Made by a program: the position numbers and the translations under genes | The notes under the pieces: generated by a model | What the model was told of the DNA's origin: nothing | Seen by the model: only the letters and a program-made list of their open reading frames with translations | Databases searched by the model: none | IMG/VR virus record: IMGVR_UViG_3300036760_000522 | Location: 186,001 to 250,000 of that record | Reading direction: 5' to 3' (one strand) | Length of the DNA stretch: 64,000 nucleotides | Shown here: positions 8,437-63,182 of the stretch, in pieces | Layout: every line of letters starts with the position of its first letter | Numbering within the stretch: position 1 is the stretch's first letter

Positions 8437-8456
8437 TCATTGGTGTTTCAGTATCC

Positions 8457-9515
8457 GTGAAAGCACCGTTCCCGTACTTCGGCGGCAAAAGCCGGGTCGC
8501 TCAGGCTGTCTGGAAGGCGTTCGGAGAAAACGTACCGAACTACATAGAACCGTTCTGCGGGTCCTGTGCAGTGCTTCTTGCTCGCCCCGGTGGGCCCGGA
8601 AAGATTGAAACTGTCAACGACGGTTGTTCCTACATTTGCAATTTCTGGAGATCAATCAAACACAACCCACAAAAAACTGCCGAGTGGTGCGACTGGCCTG
8701 TGTCCGAACTCGATTTGCATGCACGTCACGCATGGCTCATCAAGCAGTCGATCGATCTCCGCGAGAAGCTCCGAGCTGATCCCGACTACCACGACGCCAA
8801 AATCGCAGGATGGTGGGTCTGGGGGATCTGCCAATGGATCGGAGGGGGTTGGTGCAAAACCCCCTACCAACAAAGGCCGCACCTACATGATGGCGACCGA
8901 GGTGTGAACGCGGCAGAAAAACAGCTGAAGCAACAAATCCCTGGGATCCACGCTTCCGGTGTGCACAGCTTTGGAACACGTCTCCCAGCTATCGGCAACG
9001 ATCGGGCGCTCAATGGCCTGACTGCATCACCGGCACTCGAATGGTTTCAAATGCTCTCACAACGCCTCAGGAGAGTTCGATTGGTCCACGGCGACTGGAC
9101 CAGGGTACTCGGGTCTTCGACGCTTGGGAAGGGCAGGAACGTCGGAGGAAGACGGCCTACAGCTGTTTTTCTCGACGCCCCTTACGACGACGAGTTACGG
9201 GACCCTGGACTCTACACTGAGGATACAAAAAACCTCTCAGTGAAAGTCCGCATTTGGGCCCTTGAGCACGGTGATGATCCAGACCTCAGGATCGCACTTT
9301 GTGGGCTTGCGTCGGAGCACGACGGCCACATGCCGGCGACTTGGCGTGTCCATCGTTGGACGGGGGCTTCCGGCTACTCACGTGGAAAAAACCGAAGTCG
9401 TACACGCCACGAAGAAACAATTTGGTTCAGTCCGCACTGCCTCCATGCCGAAATGGACGAAACACTTTCGGCGCTCCACAACTTCGATTCAATTTCAGAA
9501 GCCTCTGATTCGTAG
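8457..9515 (+). CDS. DNA adenine methyltransferase (D12/Dam-like)
   Basis: PFPYFGGKSR, YIEPFCGSCAV (motif I), VND and FLDAPY (DPPY variant). Confidence 0.85.
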   Translation: MKAPFPYFGGKSRVAQAVWKAFGENVPNYIEPFCGSCAVLLARPGGPGKIETVNDGCSYICNFWRSIKHNPQKTAEWCDWPVSELDLHARHAWLIKQSIDLREKLRADPDYHDAKIAGWWVWGICQWIGGGWCKTPYQQRPHLHDGDRGVNAAEKQLKQQIPGIHASGVHSFGTRLPAIGNDRALNGLTASPALEWFQMLSQRLRRVRLVHGDWTRVLGSSTLGKGRNVGGRRPTAVFLDAPYDDELRDPGLYTEDTKNLSVKVRIWALEHGDDPDLRIALCGLASEHDGHMPATWRVHRWTGASGYSRGKNRSRTRHEETIWFSPHCLHAEMDETLSALHNFDSISEASDS

Positions 9516-9523
9516 GTACTAAC

Positions 9524-9841
9524 ATGGCTTCCAAAATCACGATCGGCTGTAGCCCTTGGGGAGAAAACTGTGCACAGCTCGGACAACCCGGCTACGTTGA
9601 GCTCGCCCAGAGAGAGCTCAAGGCTTTCAAGGCTCAGCTAGAGCGTCACTTTGCCGCCAAACACAACGGCGCAAAGCCGACATGTCATCTTGTCATTGTC
9701 GGCAACGAACACGATTACGGGACATACTACGACGTCCAAGCCAGTTACCGAAACGGGACGGAAGAGGTCGACGCATTCTGGCTCGAGAGCAACACACCAG
9801 AAAACTGGGATGCTACAGCCACAGCCGAGCTCAACGCATGA
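9524..9841 (+). CDS. Hypothetical phage protein (HDYGTYYDV motif)
   Basis: Clean ORF 8 nt after the methylase; ATGA overlap with the next gene. Confidence 0.75.
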   Translation: MASKITIGCSPWGENCAQLGQPGYVELAQRELKAFKAQLERHFAAKHNGAKPTCHLVIVGNEHDYGTYYDVQASYRNGTEEVDAFWLESNTPENWDATATAELNA

Positions 9842-10083
9842 CTTTCACAGAATGGAAGCAAGCCTGCCTCACGACACTAGAAGATATCGGGCTACTCATC
9901 GATGACTTGTGGGATTCAGACGATCCTTACGAAGTCTTCCACATGAGCAGAGAGGCTTACAAAGCGCAACAAAGCCCGCGAAGTTTTGTCGAGGACATCT
10001 TCTCAGAGGAGATTGCGCGAGCTGAGGGCGAAGCTCAAGAACGGCGCGACGCGAACGCACACTACGTGGACAGCGAAGAATGA
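9838..10083 (+). CDS. Small acidic protein (81 aa)
   Basis: Start reassigned to ATG 9838 (ATGA overlap); 21 of 81 residues are Asp/Glu. Confidence 0.7.
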   Translation: MTFTEWKQACLTTLEDIGLLIDDLWDSDDPYEVFHMSREAYKAQQSPRSFVEDIFSEEIARAEGEAQERRDANAHYVDSEE

Positions 10084-10085
10084 AT

Positions 10086-10781: not shown

Positions 10782-10811
10782 TGGACGGCCCGCATAAAAT
10801 CACAAACTGTG

Positions 10812-10845
10812 AAACCCATCTGGTTGTGGAGAACCAGATGGGTTT
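10812..10845. terminator. Perfect 14-bp inverted repeat, probable intrinsic terminator
   Basis: AAACCCATCTGGTT-gtggag-AACCAGATGGGTTT in the intergenic gap. Confidence 0.6.
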
Positions 10846-10891
10846 GTTGTTACGCCAACAAAACTTGGAGGGTGGGTGCCGAAAGTCCCGA

Positions 10892-11380: not shown

Positions 11381-13223
11381 TGAGTGTTTCCTCCAACAGT
11401 TTGATATTGGCTTGCGCCTCCTCGAACGCCACGGATTCGGCATCGTCTGGAAGCAGCTCTAACACTCTGCGAGCGTAATAAAGACTTTCGTCGAGCTTCC
11501 CCAATTCAGCAAAAACAGTGGTCAGCCGCTGGCACGGCAGCCAGGTATAGCTAGCCATGTCGATCCACCAGATTGTGAAGGGTGGTTGCCCTATCGTGGT
11601 CGAAGCGTAGAGGTAGAAAGAAAGGGCTTCCTCGTAACGCTCAGCAATGTAAGCCAAATCTCCGAGACGTAGCCAATGCTCAGTCCGGCTCCAATCGTCT
11701 TCAGTGGCACGAATCAACACCTCTCGGGCCTTCCCCCATTGCTGTTCCGCGGTGTAAAGCTTCGCAAGCACAAGTCGTGTGTGATACCTGAGAGGCCCAT
11801 TCTTGGGAGGCAACGACAAGAACTCTTCAAGTCGTGCAATCGCACGCTTCGGGTCGTGTTCGCGCCACTCAGCTCCCAAATAGTGTAGCGAGTTTTCGTT
11901 GCGATTCGTGATCCAGTCATCCATCAGTGATTTGCGGTTCTGGACTTTCCTCTGCTTCTGTCGTGCCAGCTCACGGTCCTTTGCTCGTTCGTGTAAAGTT
12001 TGAACCTGTGGAAGTGTGATCGCCAAGTAGTCCGGCGGATAGTCCAACGTATTGTGTGTACCACGTGTGTAGCGAATCTTCGGGTCATTACGGCAGAGCC
12101 AAGGAAACACCCACCGTTGACCTGTACCTGTACGAAAAACAACGCCAACTTTCGCGCCCTTCGGCATCTGATCAAGACCGAGCAATGCTTCGAAACCTGA
12201 AATCAGACGCTCATGACCTTCCGTCATGAAAATCCAGTCAGACGTGCAATGGTCCAGGCACTGATTGCGGACCCACGCAAAATGGATCTGCTTTTGGATT
12301 TTCTCCTCGTCAGAAACTATCTCACCCAGTTCAATGAGATCCATCTTCGGCGGACCTGAAGGCTGATCCAAATCAAATACGACATCCGCGTACTTCTCAG
12401 CAATCTCTCGCGTGTTGTCGACAGTTCTCGGATCGATTCCGATCACCATCTCATCAGCGACTCCGCGAAAGCTCGCAAGCGTTGCTTCAAGGTCCTCAGC
12501 CTCGTCACGGACAGGCATCGTCACAGACAATGTGAACGACTTAGGGAAACCGCAGACCGCCAACAAATACGGGCCGAGTACCTCGATCCGCACATCTTTG
12601 AAGTATTGTGCCAAGTCACGCTTGAAGCTCATGGCATTGTATTTCACTGTGTGCTGAGGTTCTTCATCAGGACCCAGACGATCATTCGGTACCGAGAGTA
12701 ACGCTCGTCCCTCTTGAGCCGCCAACTTGAAAATCAAAGCCCGCGTCTCAGCAGACATGTGTTCGACGAACTCTGTCGCTACTACTATTGCTGGGGACTC
12801 TTCGTGAATCAGGTCACCGTTGGTTCCAACTAAGGCACGATGCGACAGCGCACGACGTATTTCACTTTCCTGATTCAAATCCGCGACTACCGTCTCGAGG
12901 TCTTTTTCCTTCGCTTGTTGCAAAGCCTCCGTGCTGTGGTCAACAACCAGGACATTGGCCTTACGGGTGTCTCTGAGACGCGCTCCCAATACCCCAGTAC
13001 CTCCACCGAGATCTACGACACGGGCATGGTACGGGAGAATGCGTTCAATCCTCGTGTACACTTGGCTCAACGCTTGTTTACGCCATTCCTCTTGATCCTT
13101 GTCTTTCCAAAGACGATTCCAAAGATCCGGCGAGTTCGCCAGACGCGCCTGACGCTCTGCCATAGCTGCATCCAAGGCAGCCCTGTCCGCCGTGACCGTA
13201 CCGGTCACATCTGAGGTATCCAT
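11325..13223 (-). CDS. SAM-methyltransferase + GT2 glycosyltransferase + TPR fusion
   Basis: VVDLGGGTG and TEFVEH (class I MTase); LSVTMPVRDEAEDL...FAWVRN...DWIF (GT2); C-terminal TPR-like helices; AAGGAG SD. Confidence 0.85.
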   Translation of the reverse strand: MDTSDVTGTVTADRAALDAAMAERQARLANSPDLWNRLWKDKDQEEWRKQALSQVYTRIERILPYHARVVDLGGGTGVLGARLRDTRKANVLVVDHSTEALQQAKEKDLETVVADLNQESEIRRALSHRALVGTNGDLIHEESPAIVVATEFVEHMSAETRALIFKLAAQEGRALLSVPNDRLGPDEEPQHTVKYNAMSFKRDLAQYFKDVRIEVLGPYLLAVCGFPKSFTLSVTMPVRDEAEDLEATLASFRGVADEMVIGIDPRTVDNTREIAEKYADVVFDLDQPSGPPKMDLIELGEIVSDEEKIQKQIHFAWVRNQCLDHCTSDWIFMTEGHERLISGFEALLGLDQMPKGAKVGVVFRTGTGQRWVFPWLCRNDPKIRYTRGTHNTLDYPPDYLAITLPQVQTLHERAKDRELARQKQRKVQNRKSLMDDWITNRNENSLHYLGAEWREHDPKRAIARLEEFLSLPPKNGPLRYHTRLVLAKLYTAEQQWGKAREVLIRATEDDWSRTEHWLRLGDLAYIAERYEEALSFYLYASTTIGQPPFTIWWIDMASYTWLPCQRLTTVFAELGKLDESLYYARRVLELLPDDAESVAFEEAQANIKLLEETLNAAHRSNGDPDGPRDLHS

Positions 13224-13268
13224 GTATTCTCCTTTGCCGTGCTCTCTAGAACACCGGCTGAACAGTCG

Positions 13269-18525: not shown

Positions 18526-19326
18526 TTATTTTTCCCGACGCGGGACAACCCACTGTCTGGTAGTAGCTAACACCGCGGCTACATGCTTACAGACACGATT
18601 GTCACGCTCAGGGTCTCGTATGTTGGGTGGAGAGGCGGTTCCACGAGCCTTGCCGAGCTGAAAAGTTTCTTGCCGAGCGTGAAACTCTGGACCCAGCCAC
18701 TGCCATGCAGGACAAGAGCACGAAAGCTCGAGGTCAAGTTTCGTGAAATGTACTGCCGATCCCCGACGAACGGCTCGAACCTTTACGGCTTTGGCTCCGT
18801 TGCCACAATTCACACTAAAGATCCAACGCAGGTTTCTGGGATCAAATCGCTTCAAGGCAGCGGAACATCCAAGTGATCGCTCTTGGAACTTCGTATCCAA
18901 ACCTTCCAAGATCTGCTCCAGAGTTGCAGATGTCCGAATGCTTGAATCCCCGGACAACAACAGTGTCGGGGCTCCTTCCAAGCGCCAAAGCTCGACAACA
19001 AATGTCGCAGCCTTGTAGGTGTTGTCGGTATCGTCGCGATACGGATACTGTGTTTTTGTCGGAGGGTTTGGCGTGCCGAGACCAAAGTAGCTCGTCTCAC
19101 CACCGACGTCCCGAACATCTACACGTGAATGCTCCTTGGTCTTATCCGTAGGGTTCGTGATCCGCCAAATGGGCTCATCACGATTAGGCCGACGACGAGT
19201 GTCGTCAACGGGCTTCGCATGTGTCGACTGACCAGGAATGTCAGCGGGTAACGCGAGTCCACGACCAGGCGGATCTCCTGTAGGAGTCTCCGAAACCGCA
19301 CGCTGTGTTGTGAGGGCCTGTGACAC
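18526..19326 (-). CDS. SWIM zinc-finger protein
   Basis: CSCPAW...VCKHVAAVL. Confidence 0.8.
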   Translation of the reverse strand: MSQALTTQRAVSETPTGDPPGRGLALPADIPGQSTHAKPVDDTRRRPNRDEPIWRITNPTDKTKEHSRVDVRDVGGETSYFGLGTPNPPTKTQYPYRDDTDNTYKAATFVVELWRLEGAPTLLLSGDSSIRTSATLEQILEGLDTKFQERSLGCSAALKRFDPRNLRWIFSVNCGNGAKAVKVRAVRRGSAVHFTKLDLELSCSCPAWQWLGPEFHARQETFQLGKARGTASPPNIRDPERDNRVCKHVAAVLATTRQWVVPRREK

Positions 19327-24171: not shown

Positions 24172-26070
24172 TCACACAAAAACAAAAACCTGCTCAGTAG
24201 CTGGCACCTTTCCTATTCTACCAAGAGGTAGAACCAAGGTGCGCTGCAAACGAAACCCTGCGAGACCTGCCAGTCGCACCAACTCGTCCGCAATCGGGAA
24301 CCGTTGTGCCCCTCGTCGCACATTCTTTGTGTTCACACAAAACAAACCACCGTCACGTAAGTGTCGTTTGGACTTCAACACGAACGGTTGAAGAAACCCT
24401 TCCAGCCAAAGATCCCACGTTGAATACCTGACCCAACTCTGCGCCGCACTATCAGAGTACTTCTCGACCGAAAAGTACGGAGGACTCGTTAGTACAAGAT
24501 CCGCGCGCAAGTCTGCCAGGTCCACGTCTTCGAACGGGTATTCAAAAAAGTCAAAATGGCCAACCACCGATTGCAAAGCTGTGTATGACGCACCAGCTTT
24601 AGGATGAGGATCAACGCCAACGTATCGTCTACCGCTTGCCAGAGTCCCTACAGCACGACCACCATAACCAGCACACGGATCCAAGACGGTACCGCCAACA
24701 GGGCACAACGCCTCCACCAGAGCCTTTGCAAAACAAGGGCGAAAATTGGTCGGGCCACGAACAACGGCCTGCAAAGCGCGAAACACACGTACAGGCTGCA
24801 CAGGATCACCAACAGCCAATTGAAACTTCACGGCCCTACGCACATATTCCTGGTCGTACCACGCCGATCGCACTGAAGGACGATCTTGATATCTAGCGTC
24901 ATATCTGTGTGGAAAGAACCGCTGACACAGCTTCGATCCTGAACGTGTTTCACGCACCAATCTATCTTCCACTAGTTCAGTTTTGGACAACAACAGCTTA
25001 GACCAATCTATCTCCGCCTCCTCCATCGACGGCACAACCAAAGGCAGCACAGTTCTCGAAAGAACAGCGACGACGCTCTCTACATACGTTAGTGTGCGAG
25101 CGTCCAGCCTCTTGATCGCAAGACTCGCAGTTTCAACGTCCAACTCGACTTTGCTGCTACGTGAAGGACGACCTGTACATCCAGGGGCTAAACCGTGTTG
25201 TTTCCTCCAACGCGAAACACTTGTGCGGGACACTTGAAGTACATCAGCGATGTCGTCGGTATGGAGGCCCCGATCAAATAACGATCGCAAACGATCGTAG
25301 GTCAACAGATCTCGAGGCGCTAAACCAGCCTTGGGCGTCTTGACAGCGATCTTGTAACCGAGGCTAGGATGTAGATGTGGACGCACCAAATCCAAAAACC
25401 TGTTCAGCGCTGTGCGCCCTTGAATGTGGAGGGATCCGTCCTCGTAGACTTTGCTTCTGATACCCAGACTTGTCAGAATTCCAACCTGCACGCGTTGATC
25501 CTCTAGTGAGGGACCAACAGTGATCCTTACGTAATTACCTGAACGCGATCCATCATCCATGAACCAGACAGCCAGAGCTAAGCCGTCTACCCACTCTACT
25601 GGCAAGCGTGTAAACGTTTTGGGCCCTGAACCTGACGGGTAGAACAACTGCCAATAAGGAAAGAGGGCTCGACACGCATGTGTGAACAATCGATGACCCA
25701 GATACTCCCCTTTATCTGCTTTCCGAATGGCTACTGTAAACACCCCCCACTCCTCAGCTTTCCACAACAAATACTCATGTTGTTTGACGGAGTGGTGTTC
25801 TTGGTATCGTGCTGTATTTGTACCAGAACGCCGTAAGTTACCGTCACCTAACATTGATCCAACTAGAATTGACCTCAGACGATCGGTCAAAGTATCTGGG
25901 AGCCCAAAGCGATCACTCTTAGTCAGTGTCGGAATGCCGTACTTCTGGCGAAGACGACTAACGTGTGCTTGGGAAATACCAAACACACGACCAATTTCGG
26001 TCTCTGTCTTGTGCTGATCAAGATAAAGGTCCCGCAGAAATTGTTCCGTCAATCGTGTCGACACCTTCAC
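24172..26070 (-). CDS. HTH + double-motif LAGLIDADG endonuclease + HTH + amino-DNA methyltransferase fusion
   Basis: LVGSMLGDG and LAVWFMDDG (LAGLIDADG_2); IADVLQVSRTSVSRW (HTH); VLDPCAGYGGR and LTSPPY (MTase). Confidence 0.85.
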   Translation of the reverse strand: MKVSTRLTEQFLRDLYLDQHKTETEIGRVFGISQAHVSRLRQKYGIPTLTKSDRFGLPDTLTDRLRSILVGSMLGDGNLRRSGTNTARYQEHHSVKQHEYLLWKAEEWGVFTVAIRKADKGEYLGHRLFTHACRALFPYWQLFYPSGSGPKTFTRLPVEWVDGLALAVWFMDDGSRSGNYVRITVGPSLEDQRVQVGILTSLGIRSKVYEDGSLHIQGRTALNRFLDLVRPHLHPSLGYKIAVKTPKAGLAPRDLLTYDRLRSLFDRGLHTDDIADVLQVSRTSVSRWRKQHGLAPGCTGRPSRSSKVELDVETASLAIKRLDARTLTYVESVVAVLSRTVLPLVVPSMEEAEIDWSKLLLSKTELVEDRLVRETRSGSKLCQRFFPHRYDARYQDRPSVRSAWYDQEYVRRAVKFQLAVGDPVQPVRVFRALQAVVRGPTNFRPCFAKALVEALCPVGGTVLDPCAGYGGRAVGTLASGRRYVGVDPHPKAGASYTALQSVVGHFDFFEYPFEDVDLADLRADLVLTSPPYFSVEKYSDSAAQSWVRYSTWDLWLEGFLQPFVLKSKRHLRDGGLFCVNTKNVRRGAQRFPIADELVRLAGLAGFRLQRTLVLPLGRIGKVPATEQVFVFV

Positions 26071-35986: not shown

Positions 35987-36505
35987 CTAGATAGACACCT
36001 GTATCCCGAGAAACTCACTGTTCACAGATTTTGGCAATTGTGCAACATGTCCAACCACCGCTGCCGGGGCAAATAAGCTGCCTGACAGTGTCAATTCGTC
36101 TTCAGGTGTCCAGAAACCACGACTTGAAAAATACAAGAGTTGGTTGACTGTGTAGATCAACAGAACCAACGGACCGCCACCAATGCGTGAGGCGTAGGTG
36201 TAGCGCTCGTAAGTAGACGTAGAAATAAGACACCCACCAAAAAGCATGGTTGCGTATCGATAGACAAGCTGTTGGCGAGTCGTCGAAGCAAAGTCGTCCC
36301 CTGGTTCATCTGATCCCCAGATCAAAAACCCACAAGCTCGCCCGTCAGAATAGTCCACCGTCCGATCATCAATCGGCACATCGGCCCAACGAATCCCTTG
36401 GCCCCCAGGCCATCCTCCAACAACCATGGTTGGCTGAATGGTAACGGTCGTCGAGTCTTCCTTGTAGAAGACGACACAATCCCGTGTACGAAGCGTGTCC
36501 AACAT
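35987..36505 (-). CDS. Decoration-protein paralog 3 (172 aa)
   Basis: Start reassigned to ATG 36505 (MLDTLRTRDCVVF) to match the paralogs. Confidence 0.8.
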   Translation of the reverse strand: MLDTLRTRDCVVFYKEDSTTVTIQPTMVVGGWPGGQGIRWADVPIDDRTVDYSDGRACGFLIWGSDEPGDDFASTTRQQLVYRYATMLFGGCLISTSTYERYTYASRIGGGPLVLLIYTVNQLLYFSSRGFWTPEDELTLSGSLFAPAAVVGHVAQLPKSVNSEFLGIQVSI

Positions 36506-44439: not shown

Positions 44440-45102
44440 TCACTCACAGACGTTTCCACCCCTATTTGCCCACTGGGGCAAAGAGACGGCGCGCAAGATA
44501 TTAAAATTTTTCGCAGCAATAGTGCTGAAAATCTTCTCATACGGAACGTACTTTGAATCTTCTTCGGCCGCGCCTTTCAAGCGATCAACAGCACGAAAAA
44601 AATAGTGACGCACACCACTCTGTGGGATGCTCAGGCGCAAAGCCACTTCAGACTGACAGGTAGTCTGCCACATGCCCACCAAAATGTTGACGTCTCGAGA
44701 ACTGAACAGCGATGACAAGTCAGTACGCATGTCCTCTTCCGTGACCTGCGGTATGCTCAACAAGAATTTTAGCCGCTTGATCCCGCGAGCAAGTCGGTAG
44801 CTGACAGCCGCTTGTGTCACTTCGAAGATCGCTGCAATGTCGGCCTGCTTCTTCCGCAAAATGTAGTAGAGCAAAATCAAATCGGCCTCACGCCCCGGGA
44901 TACGATCCAACAAAGGCATGATTTTCTCTTCATACGAACTGGTGGCAAAGAACGCTTCCAAATCCTCGGTACTGACGCCCTCGATAGAATCAGCGTCGAC
45001 ACTGTCACCTGTGTCGTCAGCAAAAAAGGCGTCGTCTTCAGACGAGAATCGGGTAGCCAATCTCATCGGATCAATCGGGATCACATATCCGGCAGTACTC
45101 AC
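44440..45102 (-). CDS. Tandem sigma-70 region-4-like HTH protein (phage transcription factor)
   Basis: LDRIPGREADLILLYY...KQADIAAIFEVTQAAVSYRLARG plus a second HTH CQSEVALRLSIPQSGVRHYFFRA; GGAGG SD. Confidence 0.75.
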   Translation of the reverse strand: MSTAGYVIPIDPMRLATRFSSEDDAFFADDTGDSVDADSIEGVSTEDLEAFFATSSYEEKIMPLLDRIPGREADLILLYYILRKKQADIAAIFEVTQAAVSYRLARGIKRLKFLLSIPQVTEEDMRTDLSSLFSSRDVNILVGMWQTTCQSEVALRLSIPQSGVRHYFFRAVDRLKGAAEEDSKYVPYEKIFSTIAAKNFNILRAVSLPQWANRGGNVCE

Positions 45103-48941: not shown

Positions 48942-49637
48942 TCAAATCGACACAACACCAGCACCAGCAAAAAGTCGTCGCAATTCGGCGTCACCAAGTT
49001 CCTCCCACAGCTCGCCGGGATCTTTGGTCATCCCGCCTCGTTTTCTGGCCACGCGCAAACAGACGTCGTGTATCCGGAACTCCGAGCCGTAATGATCCTG
49101 AAATCTCCGCACAGCCCGCCTACCCTCCAAATCCGCATCAGCTAGGAGGACTATGTCCGAAACCATGCGTCGGAGAAATCTGAGCATCAGGCGCGACGGA
49201 GACAAGCCAAGGACCGCAGCTGTCTCCGGGAACACGCGCTCAACAGGGAAGAAATCAAAGACACCCTCAACCAACACAGCGCGTTGTGCTGCCCAAATTA
49301 TCGGAGCCGTAACCCCTAAGCCAAACGAGCACAACACGTTGCGATCCACCACATAGTCGTGGTACCCGCGAACAGCTTGGTCGATGCTTCGAAACTGAAA
49401 TCCTCGCACACACCCAAGAGCATCCGTTAGGGGAAAGAGGAAAGCGTTGTCCAGCTTTCGACCCGCCCACCACAGCTGAAACTCCTTCGGCACGAAAGAG
49501 GGCAGAGGGGAATTCAAAAATCCCACTTGATGCCGAACGATCTGATCGTTTGACGCACCTCGTGCCCACAGGGCTTCCTGTGCCTGTGTTCCATCTAAGC
49601 CCTGAGCATGGTGAACAAGATCATCTAGCCAGGTCAT
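48942..49637 (-). CDS. DnaG-like primase catalytic/Toprim domain without zinc-binding domain
   Basis: FLFPL...GFQFR, LVEGVFD, ADAD, KDPGE. Confidence 0.8.
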   Translation of the reverse strand: MTWLDDLVHHAQGLDGTQAQEALWARGASNDQIVRHQVGFLNSPLPSFVPKEFQLWWAGRKLDNAFLFPLTDALGCVRGFQFRSIDQAVRGYHDYVVDRNVLCSFGLGVTAPIIWAAQRAVLVEGVFDFFPVERVFPETAAVLGLSPSRLMLRFLRRMVSDIVLLADADLEGRRAVRRFQDHYGSEFRIHDVCLRVARKRGGMTKDPGELWEELGDAELRRLFAGAGVVSI

Positions 49638-51455: not shown

Positions 51456-52693
51456 AGGTGTGCTCCCTCTTGTCCTTCAGTAGGAACCACCAATTTTCCT
51501 GACTCCGTCAAGTGATACTCATCCACTGTACAAAAGGCCAAACGAGTCGAACTTTTTTTCTCCTCAGTGCCGGTGGTAGCAGCAGCCTTGGACGGTATCA
51601 GCAATGCACGAAGCTCCACCAAATGGCTCTTGGACTTGTCAAATAGAGACAAAAAACTACGAATGTTGATGTTAGAAGCAAACGTGGGTTTCTCTGCCTG
51701 CCGGACAGGATCTGTCTCGACGGGCATGCTCGTCACAACATCCGAATCCAAACTGCAACGAAACAGCAGCTTTGAATCTTCGTACGTGACTCGCACCTTG
51801 TCTTGTGGACGGTCCCCGAACTCTGCAATCATCTGCCGCAGCACTCGAACAATCTGGTCCCGAGGCACACGCAGAATGAACTTGGCGTATTCGTCCGGCG
51901 GATAGCCGTAGCGACTATGCTCTTGAACGTGCCTCGTCCAACCAAACACTGACTTGATCTCGGACGAGCCGGGGACCTGGTCTTTCGCGAAACACATCCG
52001 CTCTTCAACCTGAACACGGACTGTCGGAGAACACTTGGACAAGTAACTGATCAACATAGGGACATGGTGCGCATGGATGCCAAACCCTTTGTCCTTCAGT
52101 GACGGACTGTGAAAATGACAAACACGTTGTCCGTCCGCTGCAAAAAAAGTGCCGTTACCAGATGCGTACTCTGCACGAGCACTGTCGAACAACTGTGCAA
52201 CACGCAACGGATTCGACTCATCGGTGCCGTCAGGTGCCAAGTAGTCCGCCACCTGTGACAAGGCTTCCCGCAAGAGTACTGTCGAGAACACGTAATCCGT
52301 ATCCTGTGCGCTTCTCTTGATACTCGTAAATGCAGATTTATAGAAATCTGGATCATGTGACGATCTATCAGCGGTGACGCCCTCCTCGGTACGATACTTC
52401 ACCCAATGGCGGTCTCCGTCCTTGCCAGGCTCAATCTCAATCCAACCGTTCAAATGCTTCAAAGCTTCGACACGATCAGCCGGCCACGAAAACATCATGG
52501 CGCCTTCACCATCAACCATTTCGCACGGTATGGACACTCGAGAGTAGTGAAAGCGGTCCTGAGAATGCACCAACATCTGGTCATCCTGTGTAGTAAACAG
52601 GTAGGCTTTCTCGTGGTCCACACTCAAAGGCTTGACTACCGAGACACGGTTCAAAGCCTCATTCAGATCCTTCAGCTGTACCCTGACCTTCAT
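51419..52693 (-). CDS. DNA polymerase III beta sliding-clamp-like protein
   Basis: Starts MKVRVQLKDLNEALNRV; FFAADGQRV; three-domain size; DnaX nearby. Confidence 0.65.
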   Translation of the reverse strand: MKVRVQLKDLNEALNRVSVVKPLSVDHEKAYLFTTQDDQMLVHSQDRFHYSRVSIPCEMVDGEGAMMFSWPADRVEALKHLNGWIEIEPGKDGDRHWVKYRTEEGVTADRSSHDPDFYKSAFTSIKRSAQDTDYVFSTVLLREALSQVADYLAPDGTDESNPLRVAQLFDSARAEYASGNGTFFAADGQRVCHFHSPSLKDKGFGIHAHHVPMLISYLSKCSPTVRVQVEERMCFAKDQVPGSSEIKSVFGWTRHVQEHSRYGYPPDEYAKFILRVPRDQIVRVLRQMIAEFGDRPQDKVRVTYEDSKLLFRCSLDSDVVTSMPVETDPVRQAEKPTFASNINIRSFLSLFDKSKSHLVELRALLIPSKAAATTGTEEKKSSTRLAFCTVDEYHLTESGKLVVPTEGQEGAHLCQVSRFTTSMT

Positions 52694-52968
52694 TTCATTT
52701 CTCCTTCAAACGCAGCTAGCGCCTTCTCTACTTCTTGTAGTTTGCCTTCAAAGTCTTTCAATCGCTCCTCGAGATCCGCTTGTAGCTTCTCCCGTGTCTC
52801 CTTCAGGGTCTTCGGGTTGTACCCCGCCTTCTCGATTTCCTGAGTCAGAGCAATCAGCTCCTGTTTCTTGGCGGCTAAGAGTCCACCCAAGGTGCTCCGC
52901 TTCTCCGAAGCAGCAGCATAACGTTTACTCAGCTCATCGACCTTGGCTTGAATCAGTTCTGGCGTCAT
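52690..52968 (-). CDS. Pure coiled-coil protein (92 aa)
   Basis: Start reassigned to ATG 52968 (10 nt after GGTGT); heptad pattern. Confidence 0.75.
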   Translation of the reverse strand: MTPELIQAKVDELSKRYAAASEKRSTLGGLLAAKKQELIALTQEIEKAGYNPKTLKETREKLQADLEERLKDFEGKLQEVEKALAAFEGEMK

Positions 52969-53836
52969 ATTTTTTCTTACACCCAAACGAGTAGTCACAA
53001 AACTGGCACTGCTGACGCGTCGGCTTAGGCACGAAGACCTGATCAGGGTCCTCTCCGTCGGCTAGATGGCGTAACAGTCCACGAATCTCTACAACAACAC
53101 CAAGAGTGGCCTCGTAGAGGTCGTCTAGATCATTTTTTACAGGCTCGTACCAATCAACGCTTTCTGGTGGCCAATATCTCCAGAAAACAAAACCCACACG
53201 ATCTGGCACGTAACCATAGCGACGCTCACAGAGCATTGCGTACCAAGCTAGCTGTTTGGGGTCTTCGTACTTCTCACGCCAGCGAGACCCCTTACCATCC
53301 AAGATCACACGATCGTTGTTGGGCCGGGTCCTGTGCATCATGAAGTCAGACCGTCCTGCAAGAGTTGCGGCCGGGAGACGCAAATCCAACTTGTGCTCAA
53401 CGCGAACTTTTTTGCCGAGTAACCTGTAGTGTCGAATTATCTGGAGACCACGAGCGACTGTGGCCCGCACATCCGACATAAGTTCATTCAGGTCAACGTA
53501 GAGCGCTTTGGGATGCTCAGCGTCCCGCCAACCTAAGTACGCCTTAGGACTCCCGTCCTTGTCCTGTGTGCGATAACGTATCGTGCGCGTCACGGTCTCG
53601 TCGACACGTGCCAATAGCCAAGCTGTGGCGTCAGCGTCCCGCCAACCCTCATCGACATAAAATCTGCCGAACAGGTTCCCCACGGCGTCCCCATAAAGGG
53701 TCGCAAGTGTATCTGGCAACCCGGGCAAAATCGTACCGTTCACGTAACGATGCCAATAAGCGTAGGGACAGTTCCCGTACAGCCTTCGACCGGAATACGA
53801 GATGTACCCGTCCCAAAGACCGTCAACTCTGATCAT
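52934..53836 (-). CDS. PD-(D/E)XK (RecB/AddB/Cas4-like) nuclease with 4-Cys cluster
   Basis: ISYS...CPY, GRSDF, ILDGK, QLAWYA, CQFCDYSFGC. Confidence 0.85.
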   Translation of the reverse strand: MIRVDGLWDGYISYSGRRLYGNCPYAYWHRYVNGTILPGLPDTLATLYGDAVGNLFGRFYVDEGWRDADATAWLLARVDETVTRTIRYRTQDKDGSPKAYLGWRDAEHPKALYVDLNELMSDVRATVARGLQIIRHYRLLGKKVRVEHKLDLRLPAATLAGRSDFMMHRTRPNNDRVILDGKGSRWREKYEDPKQLAWYAMLCERRYGYVPDRVGFVFWRYWPPESVDWYEPVKNDLDDLYEATLGVVVEIRGLLRHLADGEDPDQVFVPKPTRQQCQFCDYSFGCKKKYDARTDSSQGR

Positions 53837-57613: not shown

Positions 57614-58272
57614 TGCTTGAGACCCTCTTCATTTGGATCGACTGGAACCTTGGAGAACCTGAAAAAGCGCTGTCCCTCCTTAGACACCAAACCTCGATGA
57701 TGGGGCCGCAGATCCTGCTCTTGAGGGCCCATACGAAAAAACGAACTCTTCTCAGACGGCGTCAGGTCCGCCACCTCCAAAGAGCCGTCGAGAACAGACC
57801 AAAACCAAGCCGCGGAACGCGCTATCAAATAGGCATCAGCTTCATCATGAGTCCAGCGTCGTACACCTGTATCGGCCTTCGCGGCTTCTTTCATGTCCTG
57901 TTTATCCATCTTGCCGCGTCGCACGGAAGGATCCAACTTGGCTAGCATCTTGACTGTCGAAGGATCGAAAAAAACAACATCTCGGCGGCACAAATAAACA
58001 GCTTCGTTGACGTACACGAACAATGCGTAGAGGCCCGGACTCCAGGACTCACCAAAAGGCGGGGACTCGACACCGACAGCTTCGATCTCCGGGTGATCGC
58101 AAATCAACTTGACCAACAAAGATCGAAGCTGAAGGTACCGAACAAGGAACACTTCTCGTGCCGAAGTACGAAAGACTCCCTTGGCACGTACACGATCTGC
58201 ACCCAACATCCTCGAATCGTGTACGCACCAACCGAAGCCGGTCAACGACGGATCAACACCTAGTGTGATCAA
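57583..58272 (-). CDS. ruvC: RuvC-like Holliday junction resolvase
   Basis: LGVDPSLTGFGW, VGVE, DEADAYLIA. Confidence 0.85.
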   Translation of the reverse strand: MITLGVDPSLTGFGWCVHDSRMLGADRVRAKGVFRTSAREVFLVRYLQLRSLLVKLICDHPEIEAVGVESPPFGESWSPGLYALFVYVNEAVYLCRRDVVFFDPSTVKMLAKLDPSVRRGKMDKQDMKEAAKADTGVRRWTHDEADAYLIARSAAWFWSVLDGSLEVADLTPSEKSSFFRMGPQEQDLRPHHRGLVSKEGQRFFRFSKVPVDPNEEGLKQWLLGSCSAL

Positions 58273-59153: not shown

Positions 59154-59163
59154 TTTTCACTCC

Positions 59164-59239: not shown

Positions 59240-60019
59240 CTACACCAAGTCATCCAAAAACTTTTGCATGGCAATTTCGTCAGGATCAGTAGGCGCGTCC
59301 TCCGCCTCTTTAAGTTCAGACGCCGCAAACAAGTCGTCGAACGCCTCTTCTGCGGTTTGCGGTTTTTCAATTTCAGGTGTCGCTTCTTCCGTTTCAACCT
59401 CTCCGTCACCTTCATTTTGTGGCGGAGAGGTTGAAACAGGACCACCTTCCAGCCAATTCAAGAGACTCTCGTCGTCATCTGGCATAGTCTTCGACGATCT
59501 AGTATCCTTTCGCGGCTCCTCCCCCTCGTCACCGTAAAACGCTCCTGTTTTGAGCGAAGAAACTATCAAGCTGCGTTGCATCCGAATAGACGACACTGTG
59601 CTTTCTAGTTCCTGATGCCGATGTCGGATCACCCGATTAACAAGTTTGAGTTCCTTGATCGCGAGACTGCATATCGAGATCTTGGAACGATCCTCTTTCA
59701 AAATGTGGTTGATCATGGCTACCCGATCTCGGAGATTGGGCAGCATGGTTACACGCCTATCAGTCGACAGAAGATCGTCGCTTGAGACTTGGTACGCAGC
59801 CTCGTACGCAGCCAGGTCCATCTCGAGTTGGTGGAGTTCCCGGTAGACTTCGGACGAAAAGAGGCTCACACGGTTCAGGAAACCGCGCGTTTTGAAAATC
59901 AGGTCCTGTAAATACGGAGGACCGAGGGACGCTGGATCAGAAACCAGATCGACCGTCAGTGTCGCAAGCTCTTTGTAGATCTGCTCAATTCGCTCGGGGC
60001 TCACCGGTGGATACAACAC
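59240..60019 (-). CDS. Coiled-coil protein with acidic tail (possible recombination mediator)
   Basis: Helical N-half and acidic C-tail; start may be GTG 60004. Confidence 0.7.
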   Translation of the reverse strand: MLYPPVSPERIEQIYKELATLTVDLVSDPASLGPPYLQDLIFKTRGFLNRVSLFSSEVYRELHQLEMDLAAYEAAYQVSSDDLLSTDRRVTMLPNLRDRVAMINHILKEDRSKISICSLAIKELKLVNRVIRHRHQELESTVSSIRMQRSLIVSSLKTGAFYGDEGEEPRKDTRSSKTMPDDDESLLNWLEGGPVSTSPPQNEGDGEVETEEATPEIEKPQTAEEAFDDLFAASELKEAEDAPTDPDEIAMQKFLDDLV

Positions 60020-62213
60020 CGGTGAGTGCAGACTCCAAAACCGAGGACAAAACCGTGTTCCTATTGACCACTTGGTTGTTGTCTACAGCCCGCTGAACAG
60101 CTTGCACCGAGCCGATCAACCAAACGCGTTTCCGAGCCCTCGTCACTGCCGTGTACAGGAGATTGCGCTGCAACATGATGCCCTGTGAAGGCATGATCGG
60201 CAAAATAATGTGATCGAATTCCGAGCCTTGACAGCGATGCACGGTGACTGCGTAAGCCAGCTTCAATTTCTTCGCAGCCTCATGAGGCTCAAAGTCAACC
60301 AAGAAAACAGGGCCATCAGGATTTGTGTCGTGTATGCGAACCGACATCGTACCGTCACGACCAATCGTTCTCAATGTTCCGACATCCCCATTGTAAACGT
60401 TGAGACGGTAGTCATTCGCGATCACCATTACTCGATCGCCCTCTCGAAATCGTGTAGCTCCGTGTTTGTACTCGGGCGGTCCTTCAGGATTCAAAGCATC
60501 CCGCAAACTCATATTCAAACTGTCGACGCCTATTGTGCCTTTGTACTTGGGCGACAGGATCTGAAAATTGGCATGCTGATTCTTCAGTTTCACAGCCATA
60601 TCCACAATCAGCTTCAGGATTGCGTCTTCGCTCTCGAGGGGTTTGAACCGAAACTCTGAAGTGGCCGCCTGCTGCAAGTTAGGCAATTGCCCACCATGAA
60701 TCGCGTGTGCCGCCGAGACGATCTCCCCTTTCACAGACTGGCGAAACACCTCCGTGAGTCTGACCTGTGGAATTTTACTGCAACGAAGCAGCTCACACAA
60801 AACGTGGCCCGGTCCGACACTCGGCAACTGGGCGTCGTCGCCGACCAAAATCAGCCGTGTTCCAGGGTGCAATGCAACCAAGAGTCGATACAGCAATTCT
60901 TGGTCGACCATGGACATCTCGTCCAAAATAACGGCGTCGGCGGTGTAGCGACGAAAGGCATTGAAACCCCAGGACTCGCCGTCATAACCAAGAGCTCTGT
61001 GTACCGTAGAGGCTGGACGGCCAGTCATCGCTGACAACCGTTTAGCCGCGATCCCTGTAGGAGCCATCAATTTCACATTGAGCTTGGCTTCCTCGAGTAA
61101 GTGCACAATCGCTCGAGTCGTCTGTGTTTTTCCTGTTCCAGGCAACCCTGTGATGACCAGTACGTGTTCACGGGCCAAGGTCTCGACTGCTTGTCGTTGT
61201 GACGCCGACAACGTCATGTGAGACTTTTCGTAAGCAATCAAAAATGGATCGAGGTCCACCTTGATCGTCGAGGATGTAACCAGCGATACCAAGTGCTTCG
61301 CGGTATCCCGCTCATATCTGTACAAATCGTTCAAGTAGAGACCCGCACGATCAATCGTCACCGCCTTTTGACGTGACAAGGCCTTCACCGCTTCGTCAAT
61401 CGCGCCCTTCTCGTCGGGCTTGTACTCCAACGGTTCCACATCTTCTTGCCGTGGGAGAGTCTCCAGAATCCGGAGCAACCCTGTTCGACCTAAGTAGAGA
61501 TGTCCCCGTCGAGAGCCCTCCTGCAAGGCCCACAGAATGGCTCCTTGCACACGTCGAGGATCTGATAGTGCAACCCCTAAATGTAAAGCTACACGGTCAA
61601 CCCGTGCGAAAGGCAGGAAGCCGATCTCCGTCAACCGATACGGGTTTCCCAAGATCACTCCAGGGGCTTCAGACCCAAAACGGATCATAGCCGCTTGAGT
61701 TTCCGTAGGACTGAGCCCTCCATCCCTCAGCAACACAGACAGGTCTCGTCGTTGTAGCGCTAGATCCCAAGCCAGTGTGGCGCCGGACAAGGCCTCACGC
61801 GTGACAACGTTGTTGGCCAAGTCTGAGATCTCGGATGCTTTTTCGGACAAAGCGTCAAACGTCTCTTCTTTGTACCGCTCTGCAATCAGACTGACGACGC
61901 GATAATCTGCCAACCCGTCGATGCAGCGCAGGAAAAGCACGATCTCTTGCAAATTCGGCGTGCTCAAGTAATCCCACGTACGAAACGAAAACGCGTCACC
62001 GTAGCGCTTGTTACGTGTCCACCTACCAACCAAACGAATCGGGATCCCCTCGTAAACTGTGGCAAGCCCGTACAGATTGCCCTTGGCTTTTACGGGTCTC
62101 CCAGTACCTGCGTCTAGCGACAAAATGTAGTAAGACTCTCGATTGAAAATGATCGAGTTGACAACGCCATCAATGACGCTGTCTTCCTTCTTCGACGACT
62201 CGTCCTCGAACAC
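59985..62213 (-). CDS. recD2: RecD2-type SF1B helicase
   Basis: NPYRL, GLPGTGKT, DEMSM, GDDAQLPSVGPG, LTEVFRQ, TVHRCQGSE, YTAVTRA. Confidence 0.93.
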   Translation of the reverse strand: MFEDESSKKEDSVIDGVVNSIIFNRESYYILSLDAGTGRPVKAKGNLYGLATVYEGIPIRLVGRWTRNKRYGDAFSFRTWDYLSTPNLQEIVLFLRCIDGLADYRVVSLIAERYKEETFDALSEKASEISDLANNVVTREALSGATLAWDLALQRRDLSVLLRDGGLSPTETQAAMIRFGSEAPGVILGNPYRLTEIGFLPFARVDRVALHLGVALSDPRRVQGAILWALQEGSRRGHLYLGRTGLLRILETLPRQEDVEPLEYKPDEKGAIDEAVKALSRQKAVTIDRAGLYLNDLYRYERDTAKHLVSLVTSSTIKVDLDPFLIAYEKSHMTLSASQRQAVETLAREHVLVITGLPGTGKTQTTRAIVHLLEEAKLNVKLMAPTGIAAKRLSAMTGRPASTVHRALGYDGESWGFNAFRRYTADAVILDEMSMVDQELLYRLLVALHPGTRLILVGDDAQLPSVGPGHVLCELLRCSKIPQVRLTEVFRQSVKGEIVSAAHAIHGGQLPNLQQAATSEFRFKPLESEDAILKLIVDMAVKLKNQHANFQILSPKYKGTIGVDSLNMSLRDALNPEGPPEYKHGATRFREGDRVMVIANDYRLNVYNGDVGTLRTIGRDGTMSVRIHDTNPDGPVFLVDFEPHEAAKKLKLAYAVTVHRCQGSEFDHIILPIMPSQGIMLQRNLLYTAVTRARKRVWLIGSVQAVQRAVDNNQVVNRNTVLSSVLESALTGVVSTGEPRAN

Positions 62214-62216
62214 TGT

Positions 62217-63149
62217 CTATCGATCTATGCTAGGAACCGCGGCCATCGCCAGCGTATGAAAATGTGTGGGGTCCTTAGCGGTCGTCAAATCCAAATCAAA
62301 ATTTGGAATCACAGCCTGGGCAATGAGCTTGGCCTTGAACTCGCCAACTTCACGGTCGGACAAACCGTACACGGCTATCTCCTTGTCGGACATCGAGGCC
62401 ACTCGTCCCATATTTCCGATAAGGCAATTCATCTCCATGCGACTGAATGTGACGGCACAACGGGCGTAATCGACCCAAGCCTCGAAGGCCAGCGGTGCAA
62501 CACAACGAGCTAAACCAGCCTTGACCCGAGCGAATTCCTGTATCTCCCACTGAGCGTGTGAGTCCGTCCGCAGAGTCAGGAAATGGAGCAGATTGTGGAG
62601 ATCAATCTTCCAGTACCACTCCGTATACAAGCCTAGACTGAGAGGAACACGAGCAAGCTCCCGAGCGATCTCCTCGGTTAGAGCATCAACGTACCCAGAA
62701 CTAACGTGGCTGTAGAGCACTTTCCACGTCGACATCCAACGATCATAGGTTTCACGGTCGGTCTGTTCACTGCGCCCCTGGCGGTTCGCACTGCTCTGTT
62801 TTCGGAAGACTTCAAACTCCGGAACGTAGAATTGTAAAGGAGCCAACGAATACCGCATTGAGAATTCGTTCACATTTGCCGTGCGATGTCGGATCAACTG
62901 ACGCGCAACGAAAATCGGCAGTTTCACGTGAAACTTCAACTCCACCATTTCTAGTGGTGTGGTGTGGTGCTGACGAACCAAATACCGGATTAGGCCACGA
63001 TCGTCACTTACGGTCTTCGTGCCCGGTCCATAGGAAACCCGAGCAGCCTGTACGATCGAGGCGTCCCCGCCCATATAGTCGACGAGAGCAACGAACCCGT
63101 GATTCAAAACCGGAAAGTACTTGCCTTTGACTTCGTCTGCGGTGGGCAT
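62217..63149 (-). CDS. thyX: Flavin-dependent thymidylate synthase
   Basis: AARVSY, HTTPLE, RHRTANVNEFSMRY, ELARVPL, AQWEI. Confidence 0.95.
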   Translation of the reverse strand: MPTADEVKGKYFPVLNHGFVALVDYMGGDASIVQAARVSYGPGTKTVSDDRGLIRYLVRQHHTTPLEMVELKFHVKLPIFVARQLIRHRTANVNEFSMRYSLAPLQFYVPEFEVFRKQSSANRQGRSEQTDRETYDRWMSTWKVLYSHVSSGYVDALTEEIARELARVPLSLGLYTEWYWKIDLHNLLHFLTLRTDSHAQWEIQEFARVKAGLARCVAPLAFEAWVDYARCAVTFSRMEMNCLIGNMGRVASMSDKEIAVYGLSDREVGEFKAKLIAQAVIPNFDLDLTTAKDPTHFHTLAMAAVPSIDR

Positions 63150-63182
63150 GGGAGCCCTAACACCGGCTCAGAAACCAAGGAT

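What the first reader, a model, noticed from the sequence alone, without database searches (positions are those of the whole stretch)
8442..63164. GGTGT-N10-start: candidate early/middle promoter driving leaderless genes
Seen: GGTGT lies exactly 10 nt before the start codon of three genes lacking an SD: the methylase (8442-8446, GTG 8457), thyX (63164-63160, ATG 63149) and the coiled-coil gene (52983-52979, ATG 52968). It is 11 nt before GTG 60004. It also occurs just upstream of the SD-led genes starting at 13223, 48926 and 59153. The 9524 gene has CGT-N10-ATG. Inference: a phage-specific promoter element with +1 about 11 nt downstream, giving leaderless mRNAs. A 5-mer is common by chance, so the fixed spacing is the evidence.
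Basis: partly seen in the sequence, partly recalled or inferred. Interest (0 to 1): 0.6.

Follow-up and report, generated by a model that had tools for sequence, protein, structure and literature searches.

The report
Phage promoter abutting start codons
A short DNA word (GGTGT) that sits 10-11 bases before many start codons of this uncultivated 300-kb phage is real, is conserved across a clade of related giant phages, and most likely is the core of a phage-specific promoter that starts transcripts at the start codon, so these genes need no ribosome-binding site.

Summary
The window is part of a 301,550-bp sediment jumbo phage with terminal repeats. With gene starts chosen without looking upstream, GGTGT 8-11 nt before the start occurs at 12 genes against 1.5 expected. 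That is the strongest 5-mer-by-spacing signal in the genome, ahead of the Shine-Dalgarno words, and 7 of the 12 lie outside the window.

In related jumbo phages (42-51% identical helicase, GC 51-65%) the motif is (C)GGTGTA-N10-ATG: 55, 24, 9, 31 and 24 copies against 1-4 in controls. Upstream of one orthologous gene in 11 phages, only GGTGT is invariant.

Evidence for a promoter giving leaderless mRNAs is indirect.
- TA falls at -12/-11 relative to the A of ATG, with partial T at -7 and C at -1.
- Motif genes prefer ATG and lack SD.
- The motif is enriched at divergent junctions and nearly absent at overlapping genes.
- Leadered copies also occur.
- A second, bipartite, ECF-like promoter class also sits in exact register with ATG.

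This phage has no own RNA polymerase by Pfam. It does have several sigma-like ORFs. Here the motif reads cGGTGTt, not GGTGTA.

No RNA data exist, so start sites are unmapped. One claimed site (59153) is not close to a GGTGT. The 9524 'CGT' belongs to the second promoter class.

The parts
8442..8446 (+). Class A element (tGGTGTt), 10 nt before GTG 8457 of a D12-class DNA adenine methylase. It lies in the 20-nt gap after ORF 8125-8436.
   Evidence: Pfam MethyltransfD12 starts at residue 7, which supports this start.
63160..63164 (-). Class A element (cGGTGTt), 10 nt before ATG 63149 of thyX, in a 33-nt intergenic gap.
   Evidence: GGTGT is kept in the 97% relative L003 although 3 flanking bases differ.
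60016..60020 (-). Class A element (cGGTGTt), 11 nt before GTG 60004, inside the 3' end of the RecD2-like helicase gene.
   Evidence: GGTGT is the only invariant block upstream of the orthologous gene in 11 phages.
52979..52983 (-). Class A element (gGGTGTa), 10 nt before ATG 52968 of a 92-aa coiled-coil-like ORF. It lies inside the 3' end of the upstream gene.
   Evidence: Orthologs in G001 and G002 carry GGTGTA-N10-ATG. In L003 the word reads GGTGC.
35995..35999 (-). Weaker class A match (aGGTGTc), 10 nt before ATG 35984 of a 140-aa ORF that overlaps the portal gene start.
   Evidence: portal assignment. This could be one of the roughly 1 chance matches expected.
58256..58260 (-). Possible class A element, 10 nt before TTG 58245. 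The start codon is uncertain.
   Evidence: identical in L003.
26061..26065 (-). Possible class A element, 8 nt before TTG 26052 (LAGLIDADG/HTH/methylase ORF). Spacing is off and the site is uncertain.
13251..13255 (-). Class A element (cGGTGTt) 27 nt before ATG 13223, which has an AAGGAG SD. Predicted short leadered transcript.
48955..48959 (-). Class A element (tGGTGTt) 28 nt before ATG 48926, which has an AGGAGG SD. Predicted short leadered transcript.
18570..18574 (-). cGGTGTt 44 nt before ATG 18525. Possible leadered copy.
7662..7666 (-). aGGTGTt 20 nt before GTG 7641 of the 2162-aa ORF. Possible leadered copy.
9484..9515 (+). Class B bipartite promoter. It has a -35-like TCGATTC (9484-9490), a spacer, and a -10-like TTCGTAG (9509-9515), followed by 8 nt and ATG 9524.
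   Evidence: Eight further copies in the genome share aCTCGATTTn-N14-aTTCGTAG.
44440..45102 (-). ORF with a sigma-70 region 4 domain. It is one of several sigma-like candidates that could read the phage promoters.
   Evidence: Pfam Sigma70_r4_2 at 44 bits. Conserved in five related phages. NCBIfam sigma70-ECF at 42.3 bits, just under the cut-off.

Best explanation
GGTGT is the core of a promoter element that works alone, without a -35 box. Its consensus is cGGTGTt in this phage and CGGTGTA in its relatives. It lies at about -16 to -11 relative to the transcription start.

At roughly a dozen genes of this phage, and at 20-80 genes in each relative, the start point is the A or G of the start codon itself. 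Those mRNAs are therefore leaderless and carry no Shine-Dalgarno sequence. At some other genes the same element sits 20-40 nt upstream and gives a short leader with an SD.

The phage has no detectable RNA polymerase of its own. The inferred enzyme is the host core polymerase, directed by one of the divergent sigma-70/ECF-like proteins that the phage encodes. The genes served are mainly DNA methylases and nucleotide and DNA metabolism genes, which points to an early or middle class.

Shown here: the motif, its register with start codons, its conservation, and its statistical associations. Inferred: that it acts in DNA as a promoter, the exact start point, and which factor reads it.
For: (1) Position. 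Twelve genes against 1.5 expected at 8-11 nt, the top signal genome-wide. It replicates outside the window.

(2) Clade conservation. GGTGTA-N10-ATG occurs 55, 24, 9, 31 and 24 times in five related genomes, against 3, 3, 1, 3 and 4 for the reversed pattern. In 17 related loci there is a peak of 37 at spacing 11 against about 4 at other spacings. Upstream of one orthologous gene in 11 phages, only GGTGT is invariant.

(3) -10-like geometry in relatives, with A of ATG taken as +1. T-12 is 85-91% and A-11 is 88-91%. T-7 is 59% and 53% in two genomes. C-1 is 61-71%. C-1 is enriched over other genes in G001 and G002 (p 7e-6 and 8e-6).

(4) Start codon and SD. ATG is used at 91% and 87% of motif genes in G001 and G002, against 68% and 64% of other genes. 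An SD core is present in 0/18 motif genes here against 30% of others, and in 10% against 49% in G001.

(5) Operon position. In G001, 39% of genes at divergent junctions carry it against 3% of genes overlapping their upstream neighbour (Fisher 2e-8 for divergent versus all same-strand genes). In G004 the figures are 24% against 2%.

(6) Variable-distance copies. CGGTGTT occurs 54 times in the genome. Eighteen of these lie within 50 nt upstream of a start in sense orientation, against 1.5 expected. About 7 GGTGTT lie 20-29 nt upstream against about 1 expected, some with SD.

(7) Second promoter class. In G001, 28 genes have TTCCGAAC, a 17-nt spacer, CGTAGTA, 5 nt, then ATG, at one exact spacing. 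This genome has 9 copies of a cognate CTCGATTT/TTCGTAG class. A classical two-box promoter locked to the ATG is hard to explain unless transcription starts at the codon.

(8) Polymerase and sigma. There are no hits to PF00562, PF00623 or PF00940. There are several sigma-like ORFs.

(9) Sigma-70 consensus promoters are not enriched in 46-64 kb.
Against: - No transcript data exist for this phage or its relatives, so no start site is mapped.
- In this genome the base after GGTGT is T (12/20) and A only once. The TA that makes the relatives' motif look like a -10 element is therefore absent here.
- C-1, ATG preference and divergent-junction enrichment are not significant here.
- TG abuts TA without the one-base gap of the classical extended -10.
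- T-7 is not conserved in G004.
- The 6-mer is not depleted inside genes in three of four genomes, so it cannot be sufficient on its own.
- The sigma-like ORFs score below curated cut-offs except for region 4, and a fold model of one failed (pLDDT 46).
- Gene starts come from my own simple caller.
Confidence: 0.68

Rival explanations
1. GGUGU(A) acts in the mRNA as a Shine-Dalgarno-independent translation initiation signal at -16 to -11. It would be read by the ribosome or by a phage factor. The genes would be internal cistrons of longer transcripts.
For: - Fixed distance to the start codon and mutual exclusion with SD.
- Many sites lie in tiny gaps or inside the 3' end of the upstream gene on the same strand.
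- GGUG is complementary to CACC in the 16S 3' tail (established knowledge).
- There is no depletion of the word on the antisense strand in three genomes.
Against: - The same genome uses GAGGTGA with only 3 nt to the start, so GGTGT at 10-11 nt is about 7 nt out of SD register. The fifth base also mismatches the anti-SD.
- Enrichment at divergent junctions and near absence at overlapping genes is not expected of a ribosome signal.
- C-1 and T-7 preferences fit transcription initiation.
- Copies occur at variable distance upstream of SD-led genes.
- A two-box promoter class sits in the same register with ATG.
- In G004 the word is depleted on both strands of coding DNA.
Confidence: 0.12
2. The element is a promoter, but it is read by the host's own housekeeping sigma as an extended -10 variant typical of the unknown host. 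On this reading it is not phage-specific.
For: - TA at -12/-11 and partial T-7 in relatives.
- No -35 box, as in extended -10 promoters.
- Thermus phage P23-45 uses extended -10 promoters with host holoenzyme for middle and late genes (PMC7403470).
Against: - TAnnnT without the preceding GGTG shows no peak at -12 in any of the four genomes.
- The word is conserved across phages of GC 51-65%, which probably have different hosts.
- This phage replaces A-11 by T, which a housekeeping sigma would tolerate poorly (established knowledge of sigma-70 region 2).
- The host is unknown, so its promoters could not be examined.
Confidence: 0.15
3. The word is the binding or cleavage site of a phage regulator, either a repressor/activator at promoters or an endoribonuclease that trims mRNAs just upstream of start codons. 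It would not be the promoter core itself.
For: It is a short conserved word next to starts. The 6-mer is not sufficient by itself. Some sites lie in small hairpins.
Against: - No other conserved promoter-like block accompanies it within 50 nt. At divergent junctions with under 50 nt between two start codons there is room for nothing else (e.g. G001 34172/34223).
- The hairpin association is weak (14% against 5%).
- Cleavage 10 nt away from a recognition word has no known precedent that I can cite.
Confidence: 0.07
4. Chance or codon-composition artefact.
For: A 5-mer is common (663 copies in the genome), and the window as a whole shows no excess.
Against: Positional p is 6e-8, with replication outside the window and in more than 10 other genomes of different GC.
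Confidence: 0.01

Closest known systems
Extended -10 (no -35) promoters used by Thermus phage P23-45 for middle and late genes
   Same: A single-block promoter around -16 to -7 with no -35 box. It is used by a phage that has no RNA polymerase of its own (PMC7403470). From my memory of Berdygulova et al. 2011, which I could not read here, many of those transcripts are leaderless.
   Different: The sequence is GGTG directly fused to TA rather than TGnTAnnnT.
T4 late promoters (TATAAATA read by the phage sigma gp55)
   Same: A -10-only element read by a phage-encoded minimal sigma on host core polymerase (established knowledge).
   Different: The sequence is unrelated. No gp55 homolog was detected. 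T4 late mRNAs have leaders with SD. The gene content here looks early or middle rather than late.
ECF sigma promoters (GAAC, 16-17 nt, CGT)
   Same: The second class in these phages matches this layout: TTCCGAAC, 17 nt, CGTAGTA in G001. The TGT of GGTGT resembles the GT(C/T/A) core of ECF -10 elements (from memory, not tested). The phage encodes ECF-like ORFs.
   Different: Class A has no -35 box, which ECF sigmas normally need. In this phage the class B -35 is CTCGATTT, not GAAC.
Leaderless genes of Actinobacteria, Deinococcus-Thermus and their phages
   Same: A -10 element in fixed register with the start codon, no SD, and a strong preference for ATG (established knowledge, e.g. Cortes et al. 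2013 as cited in PMC7403470).
   Different: There the element is the generic host TAnnnT. Here TAnnnT without GGTG shows no peak.
Shine-Dalgarno sequence
   Same: A short purine/G-rich word at fixed distance upstream of starts. GGTG can pair with the 16S tail.
   Different: The register is wrong by about 7 nt, the fifth base mismatches, it is mutually exclusive with true SDs, and its operon-position bias differs.

Membership tests
Sigma-70-type -10 / extended -10 promoter element | T-12 A-11 ... T-7 hexamer placed 6-8 nt upstream of the transcription start | tested here: inconclusive
   In relatives, with A of ATG as +1, T-12 is 85-91% and A-11 is 88-91%. T-7 is 59% and 53% in two genomes but 12% in G004. 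In this genome A after GGTGT occurs in 1 of 20 sites and T in 12 of 20. The start point is assumed, not mapped.
Sigma-70-type -10 / extended -10 promoter element | TG at -15/-14, one base upstream of the hexamer | tested here: not met
   TG directly abuts TA (GGTG-TA). TG.TA...T shows no positional peak.
Sigma-70-type -10 / extended -10 promoter element | Primary transcript 5' end a few nt downstream | not testable with these tools
   No RNA run holds this sequence.
ECF-sigma promoter | -35 GAAC-like box, 16-17 nt spacer, -10 CGT-like box | tested here: not met
   This applies to the GGTGT class: no conserved block lies within 50 nt upstream in any of four genomes. The feature is met by the separate CGTAG class in G001 (28 sites), and met with a different -35 word in this genome.
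Leaderless mRNA | mRNA begins at the start codon; no SD; ATG or GTG start | tested here: inconclusive
   An SD core is present in 0 of 18 motif genes against 30% of others (p 0.003). ATG is enriched in G001 and G002 but not significantly here. The 5' ends are not observable.
Shine-Dalgarno ribosome-binding site | Complementarity to the 16S 3' tail at 5-10 nt aligned spacing | tested here: not met
   GAGGTGA-type SDs in the same genome sit 3 nt from the start, whereas GGTGT sits 10-11 nt away. GGTGA is not enriched at that position.
Phage-encoded multisubunit or T7-type RNA polymerase promoter | Phage encodes such a polymerase | tested here: not met
   There are no hits to PF00562, PF00623 or PF00940 in this genome, and none to PF00623 in four relatives. 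Very divergent enzymes could escape these models. The 2162-aa ORF has no family hit.

The most novel reading that the evidence does not exclude
GGUGU(A) at -16 to -11 is an RNA signal that recruits ribosomes without Shine-Dalgarno pairing. It might act through a phage-encoded factor. If so, a whole clade of giant phages would run a private translation-initiation code for its early and middle genes.
Probability: 0.08. Interest if true: 0.85.

Novelty: new variant of a known kind. Interest (0 to 1): 0.55.

Why it matters
If the reading is right, a clade of uncultivated 240-435 kb phages expresses a substantial share of its genes as leaderless mRNAs. The share is about 5% here and about 16% in one relative, G001, plus a further ECF-like class. 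Expression would come from two private promoter classes, probably read by phage sigma-like proteins on host polymerase.

Practical consequences:
- It gives a simple sequence rule for fixing gene starts and operon boundaries in these genomes, where standard gene callers that rely on SD will misplace starts.
- It provides candidate promoter/sigma pairs that are easy to test in vitro.
- It offers a natural A-to-T switch at the position equivalent to -11, which could show how such a sigma reads its element.

I found no description of this motif in the searchable literature.

Tried and rejected
- RNA evidence. The run search found only five DNA metagenome runs, from sediment and soil, and no RNA.
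- Near-identity search in the phage collection found nothing. A tblastn of the helicase gave only distant hits.
- Host identification through the terminase in 185,579 species genomes found nothing. The host, and hence its promoter and leaderless habits, stays unknown.
- tRNA test. Only this genome has tRNAs. GGTGT lies 17 nt before tRNA-Asp, but 2 of 14 tRNAs with a nearby GGTGT is what chance gives.
- Synonymous-codon shuffles. The word is depleted on both strands only in G004, so this does not decide DNA versus RNA action.
- Divergent-junction enrichment in this genome is not significant, and my caller over-calls small ORFs there.
- A -35 partner for GGTGT was not found.
- Generic TAnnnT leaderless promoters were not found.
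- Hairpins presenting the motif in a loop are only a weak excess.
- Sigma-like ORF. A profile search against PDB sequences gave no hit. The AlphaFold model from a 4-sequence alignment was too poor (pLDDT 46.5), so no fold search was run.
- Rfam found no RNA family in the window.
- Sigma-70 consensus promoters and intrinsic terminators are at shuffle level in 46-64 kb.
- The costly large protein searches were not used.
Full report
**What the window is.** The 64-kb window is bases 186001-250000 of a single 301,550-bp contig with 53% GC. IMG/VR classes it as a virus with direct terminal repeats. It carries 14 tRNA genes outside the window. It was found in sediment metagenome runs only, with no RNA run. 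The window holds portal, terminase and protease genes, plus replication and nucleotide-metabolism genes: clamp loader, 5'-3' exonuclease, RecD2-like helicase, UvsX-like recombinase, thyX and DNA methylases. Nothing close exists among deposited phages.

**Checking the observation.**
The two SD-led examples at 13223 and 48926 have GGTGT 27 and 28 nt upstream.
- The third example, 59153, has none within 60 nt. The nearest is 88 nt upstream.
- GGTGT is not over-represented in the window: 126 found against 145 expected. The claim therefore stands or falls on position.

To test position, I called genes on the whole genome with a codon log-odds model that never looks upstream of the start (339 genes).
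- GGTGT was the second most enriched 5-mer within 22 nt of starts, after GAGGA.
- At spacing 8-11 it was the single best 5-mer-by-spacing combination of 36,828 tested: 12 against 1.49 expected, Poisson 6e-8.
- Seven of these genes lie outside the window, where 1.2 are expected (p 2e-4). This is an independent replication.
- Allowing other in-frame starts sharpens the peak to 8 genes at 10 nt and 8 at 11 nt.
- The flanks are also biased. The consensus is cGGTGTt. Of 54 CGGTGTT in the genome, 18 lie within 50 nt upstream of a start in sense orientation, against 1.5 expected.

**Relatives.** The RecD2-like helicase retrieves 18 loci from jumbo phages of 75-435 kb (helicase 42-51% identical, GC 51-65%) plus one 97% twin.
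- In these loci GGTGT shows a peak of 37 at 11 nt before ORF starts, against about 4 at other spacings. The next base is A.
- Whole-record pattern counts of GGTGTA-N10-ATG are 55, 24, 9, 31 and 24, against 3, 3, 1, 3 and 4 for the reversed pattern.
- Upstream of the gene that follows the helicase, an alignment of 11 phages has GGTGT as its only invariant block. A follows it in 10 of the 11, and T in this phage.
- Orthologs of the 92-aa gene at 52968 in two relatives also carry the element.
- The motif is therefore a conserved functional signal of a phage clade, and this phage carries a derived form of it.

**Promoter or ribosome signal?** I fetched three relatives completely.
- *Geometry.* With A of ATG as +1 and anchoring on GGTG at -16 to -13, T-12 is 85-91% and A-11 is 88-91%. 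T-7 is 59% and 53% in two genomes and 12% in the third. C-17 is 64-70% in two genomes. C-1 is 61-71%. TA at -12/-11 with a pyrimidine at -1 and a purine at +1 is the geometry of a bacterial -10 element whose transcript starts at the ATG.
- *Start codon and SD.* Motif genes use ATG more often (91% against 68% and 87% against 64%). They have C-1 more often. They rarely have an SD core (10% against 49% in G001; 0 of 18 against 30% here).
- *Operon position.* In G001 the element precedes 39% of genes at divergent junctions but 3% of genes that overlap their upstream neighbour (Fisher 2e-8 for divergent versus all same-strand genes). In G004 the figures are 24% and 2%. Some divergent pairs have under 50 nt between the two ATGs, filled by two back-to-back copies.
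- *No generic -10.* TAnnnT without GGTG has no peak, so this is not a generic host -10. No -35 partner exists.
- *Variable distance.* The element also occurs away from the start. In this genome about 7 GGTGTT lie 20-29 nt upstream of starts against about 1 expected, some with SD.
- *SD register.* True SDs of the form GAGGTGA in this genome lie 3 nt from the start. GGTGT at 10-11 nt is therefore far out of SD register.

**A second promoter class.**
- In G001, 28 genes carry TTCCGAAC, a 17-nt spacer, CGTAGTA, then exactly 5 nt and ATG. They are mostly small ORFs clustered near the contig ends. This is the two-box layout of ECF-sigma promoters.
- This genome has 9 copies of a cognate class, aCTCGATTTn-N14-aTTCGTAG. 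Most are followed by ATG after 6-11 nt, and one has a longer leader with an SD.
- A bona fide two-box promoter has no reason to keep exact register with the start codon unless transcription starts there. This class is independent evidence that the clade makes leaderless mRNAs.

**Who reads the element?**
- Pfam models of RNA polymerase beta, beta' and the T7-type enzyme find nothing.
- All five genomes examined encode a protein with sigma region 4; in this phage it is window 44440-45102 (44 bits).
- Three relatives (G001, G002, G005) also encode a protein with weak sigma region 2, and this phage has a weaker candidate (15 bits). Its alignment shows motifs that resemble sigma regions 2.1-2.4, judged from memory.
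- This genome further has a 237-aa ORF matching SigZ-type ECF sigmas over both regions (E 3e-8) and a fourth region-4-like ORF.
- All but the region 4 hits are below curated cut-offs. A structure model failed. The assignment of a reader is therefore inference.
- The A-to-T change after GGTGT in this phage argues for a phage-encoded reader rather than a housekeeping host sigma. So does conservation across phages of very different GC.

**Timing.** Genes behind the element are non-structural.
- In this phage: four or five DNA methylases, thyX, an RNA ligase, GroEL, an ATPase and a dioxygenase-like protein.
- In G001: NAD-dependent DNA ligase, a helicase, an AAA protein and an ADP-ribosylglycohydrolase.
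- The exception is a weak match before the small gene that overlaps the portal gene (35984).

**Weak points.**
- There is no direct start-site evidence.
- In this genome alone, the C-1, ATG and junction tests are not significant.
- The word is not avoided inside genes except in G004, so more than six bases must define an active site.
- In the 97% twin, the site at the 92-aa gene reads GGTGC.
- One relative (L011) lacks the motif altogether.
- My gene caller is crude.

**Verdict.** The promoter-with-leaderless-mRNA reading is the best supported, at about 0.7. The main rival is an RNA-level initiation signal, at about 0.1. Literature searches found no description of this motif. The closest known analogues are extended -10 promoters of Thermus phage P23-45 (PMC7403470), T4 late promoters, and ECF promoters.

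Noticed in passing
window 9484-9524 (+); genome 16318-, 17625-, 18014-, 27438+, 131525+, 272269+, 279460-, 286561-; G001 28 sites: A second, bipartite promoter class. In this genome it reads aCTCGATTTn-N14-aTTCGTAG, then 6-11 nt to ATG. In relative G001 it reads TTCCGAAC-N17-CGTAGTA-N5-ATG at one exact spacing, mostly before small ORFs clustered near the contig ends.
   Followed up: partly
window 44440-45102 (-); genome 262871-263584 (-), 263587-264813 (-), about 110.6 kb (-): Several divergent sigma-70/ECF-like ORFs. One conserved 300-420-aa type has a long insertion between the region 2.2-like and 2.3-like motifs. In this phage that type lacks the C-terminal helix-turn-helix part seen in relatives.
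   Followed up: partly
window 1153-7641 (-): A 2162-aa ORF with no Pfam or PHROG hit at all. GGTGT lies 20 nt upstream of its GTG.
   Followed up: partly
window 24172-26070 (-): One ORF combines helix-turn-helix domains, a LAGLIDADG endonuclease domain and the start of an N6/N4 DNA methylase. It may be a homing endonuclease inserted in, or fused to, a methylase.
   Followed up: no
genome 119145-125333 (-), outside the window: A cluster of 14 tRNA genes interspersed with small ORFs. The three fully fetched relatives have no tRNA gene. A tRNA-like 3' half lies just upstream of tRNA-Gln (119728).
   Followed up: no
L004 about 8040-8070, L020 about 8040-8068, L005 about 7140-7169, L010 about 980-1006; window 63150-63170: At some sites GGTGT(A) sits in the loop of a 5-7 bp hairpin whose 3' arm ends at the ATG. 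The stem sequences differ between orthologous sites in two relatives. Overall the excess is small (14% against 5%).
   Followed up: partly
L011 (IMGVR_UViG_3300013121_000005): This relative lacks the GGTGT element in the 22 kb examined. Instead it shows G-rich words (GGGGTC...CCC) directly before many ATGs.
   Followed up: no
L003 19231-19539 (+), the 97% twin of window 52690-52998: The element before the 92-aa coiled-coil-like gene reads GGTGC in the twin. The thyX and helicase-downstream sites keep GGTGT despite nearby substitutions.
   Followed up: no
genome 41173, 97837, 194457 (window 8457), 262062, 199223 (window 13223): Four or five separate DNA methyltransferase genes each have their own GGTGT element. 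This is an unusually large methylase set under one promoter class.
   Followed up: no
G004 (IMGVR_UViG_3300044796_000662): This is the only genome in which GGTGTA is depleted within coding DNA on both strands (z -3.1 and -4.8). Its spacer between motif and ATG is G-rich instead of carrying T at -7. IMG/VR labels the record a provirus.
   Followed up: no
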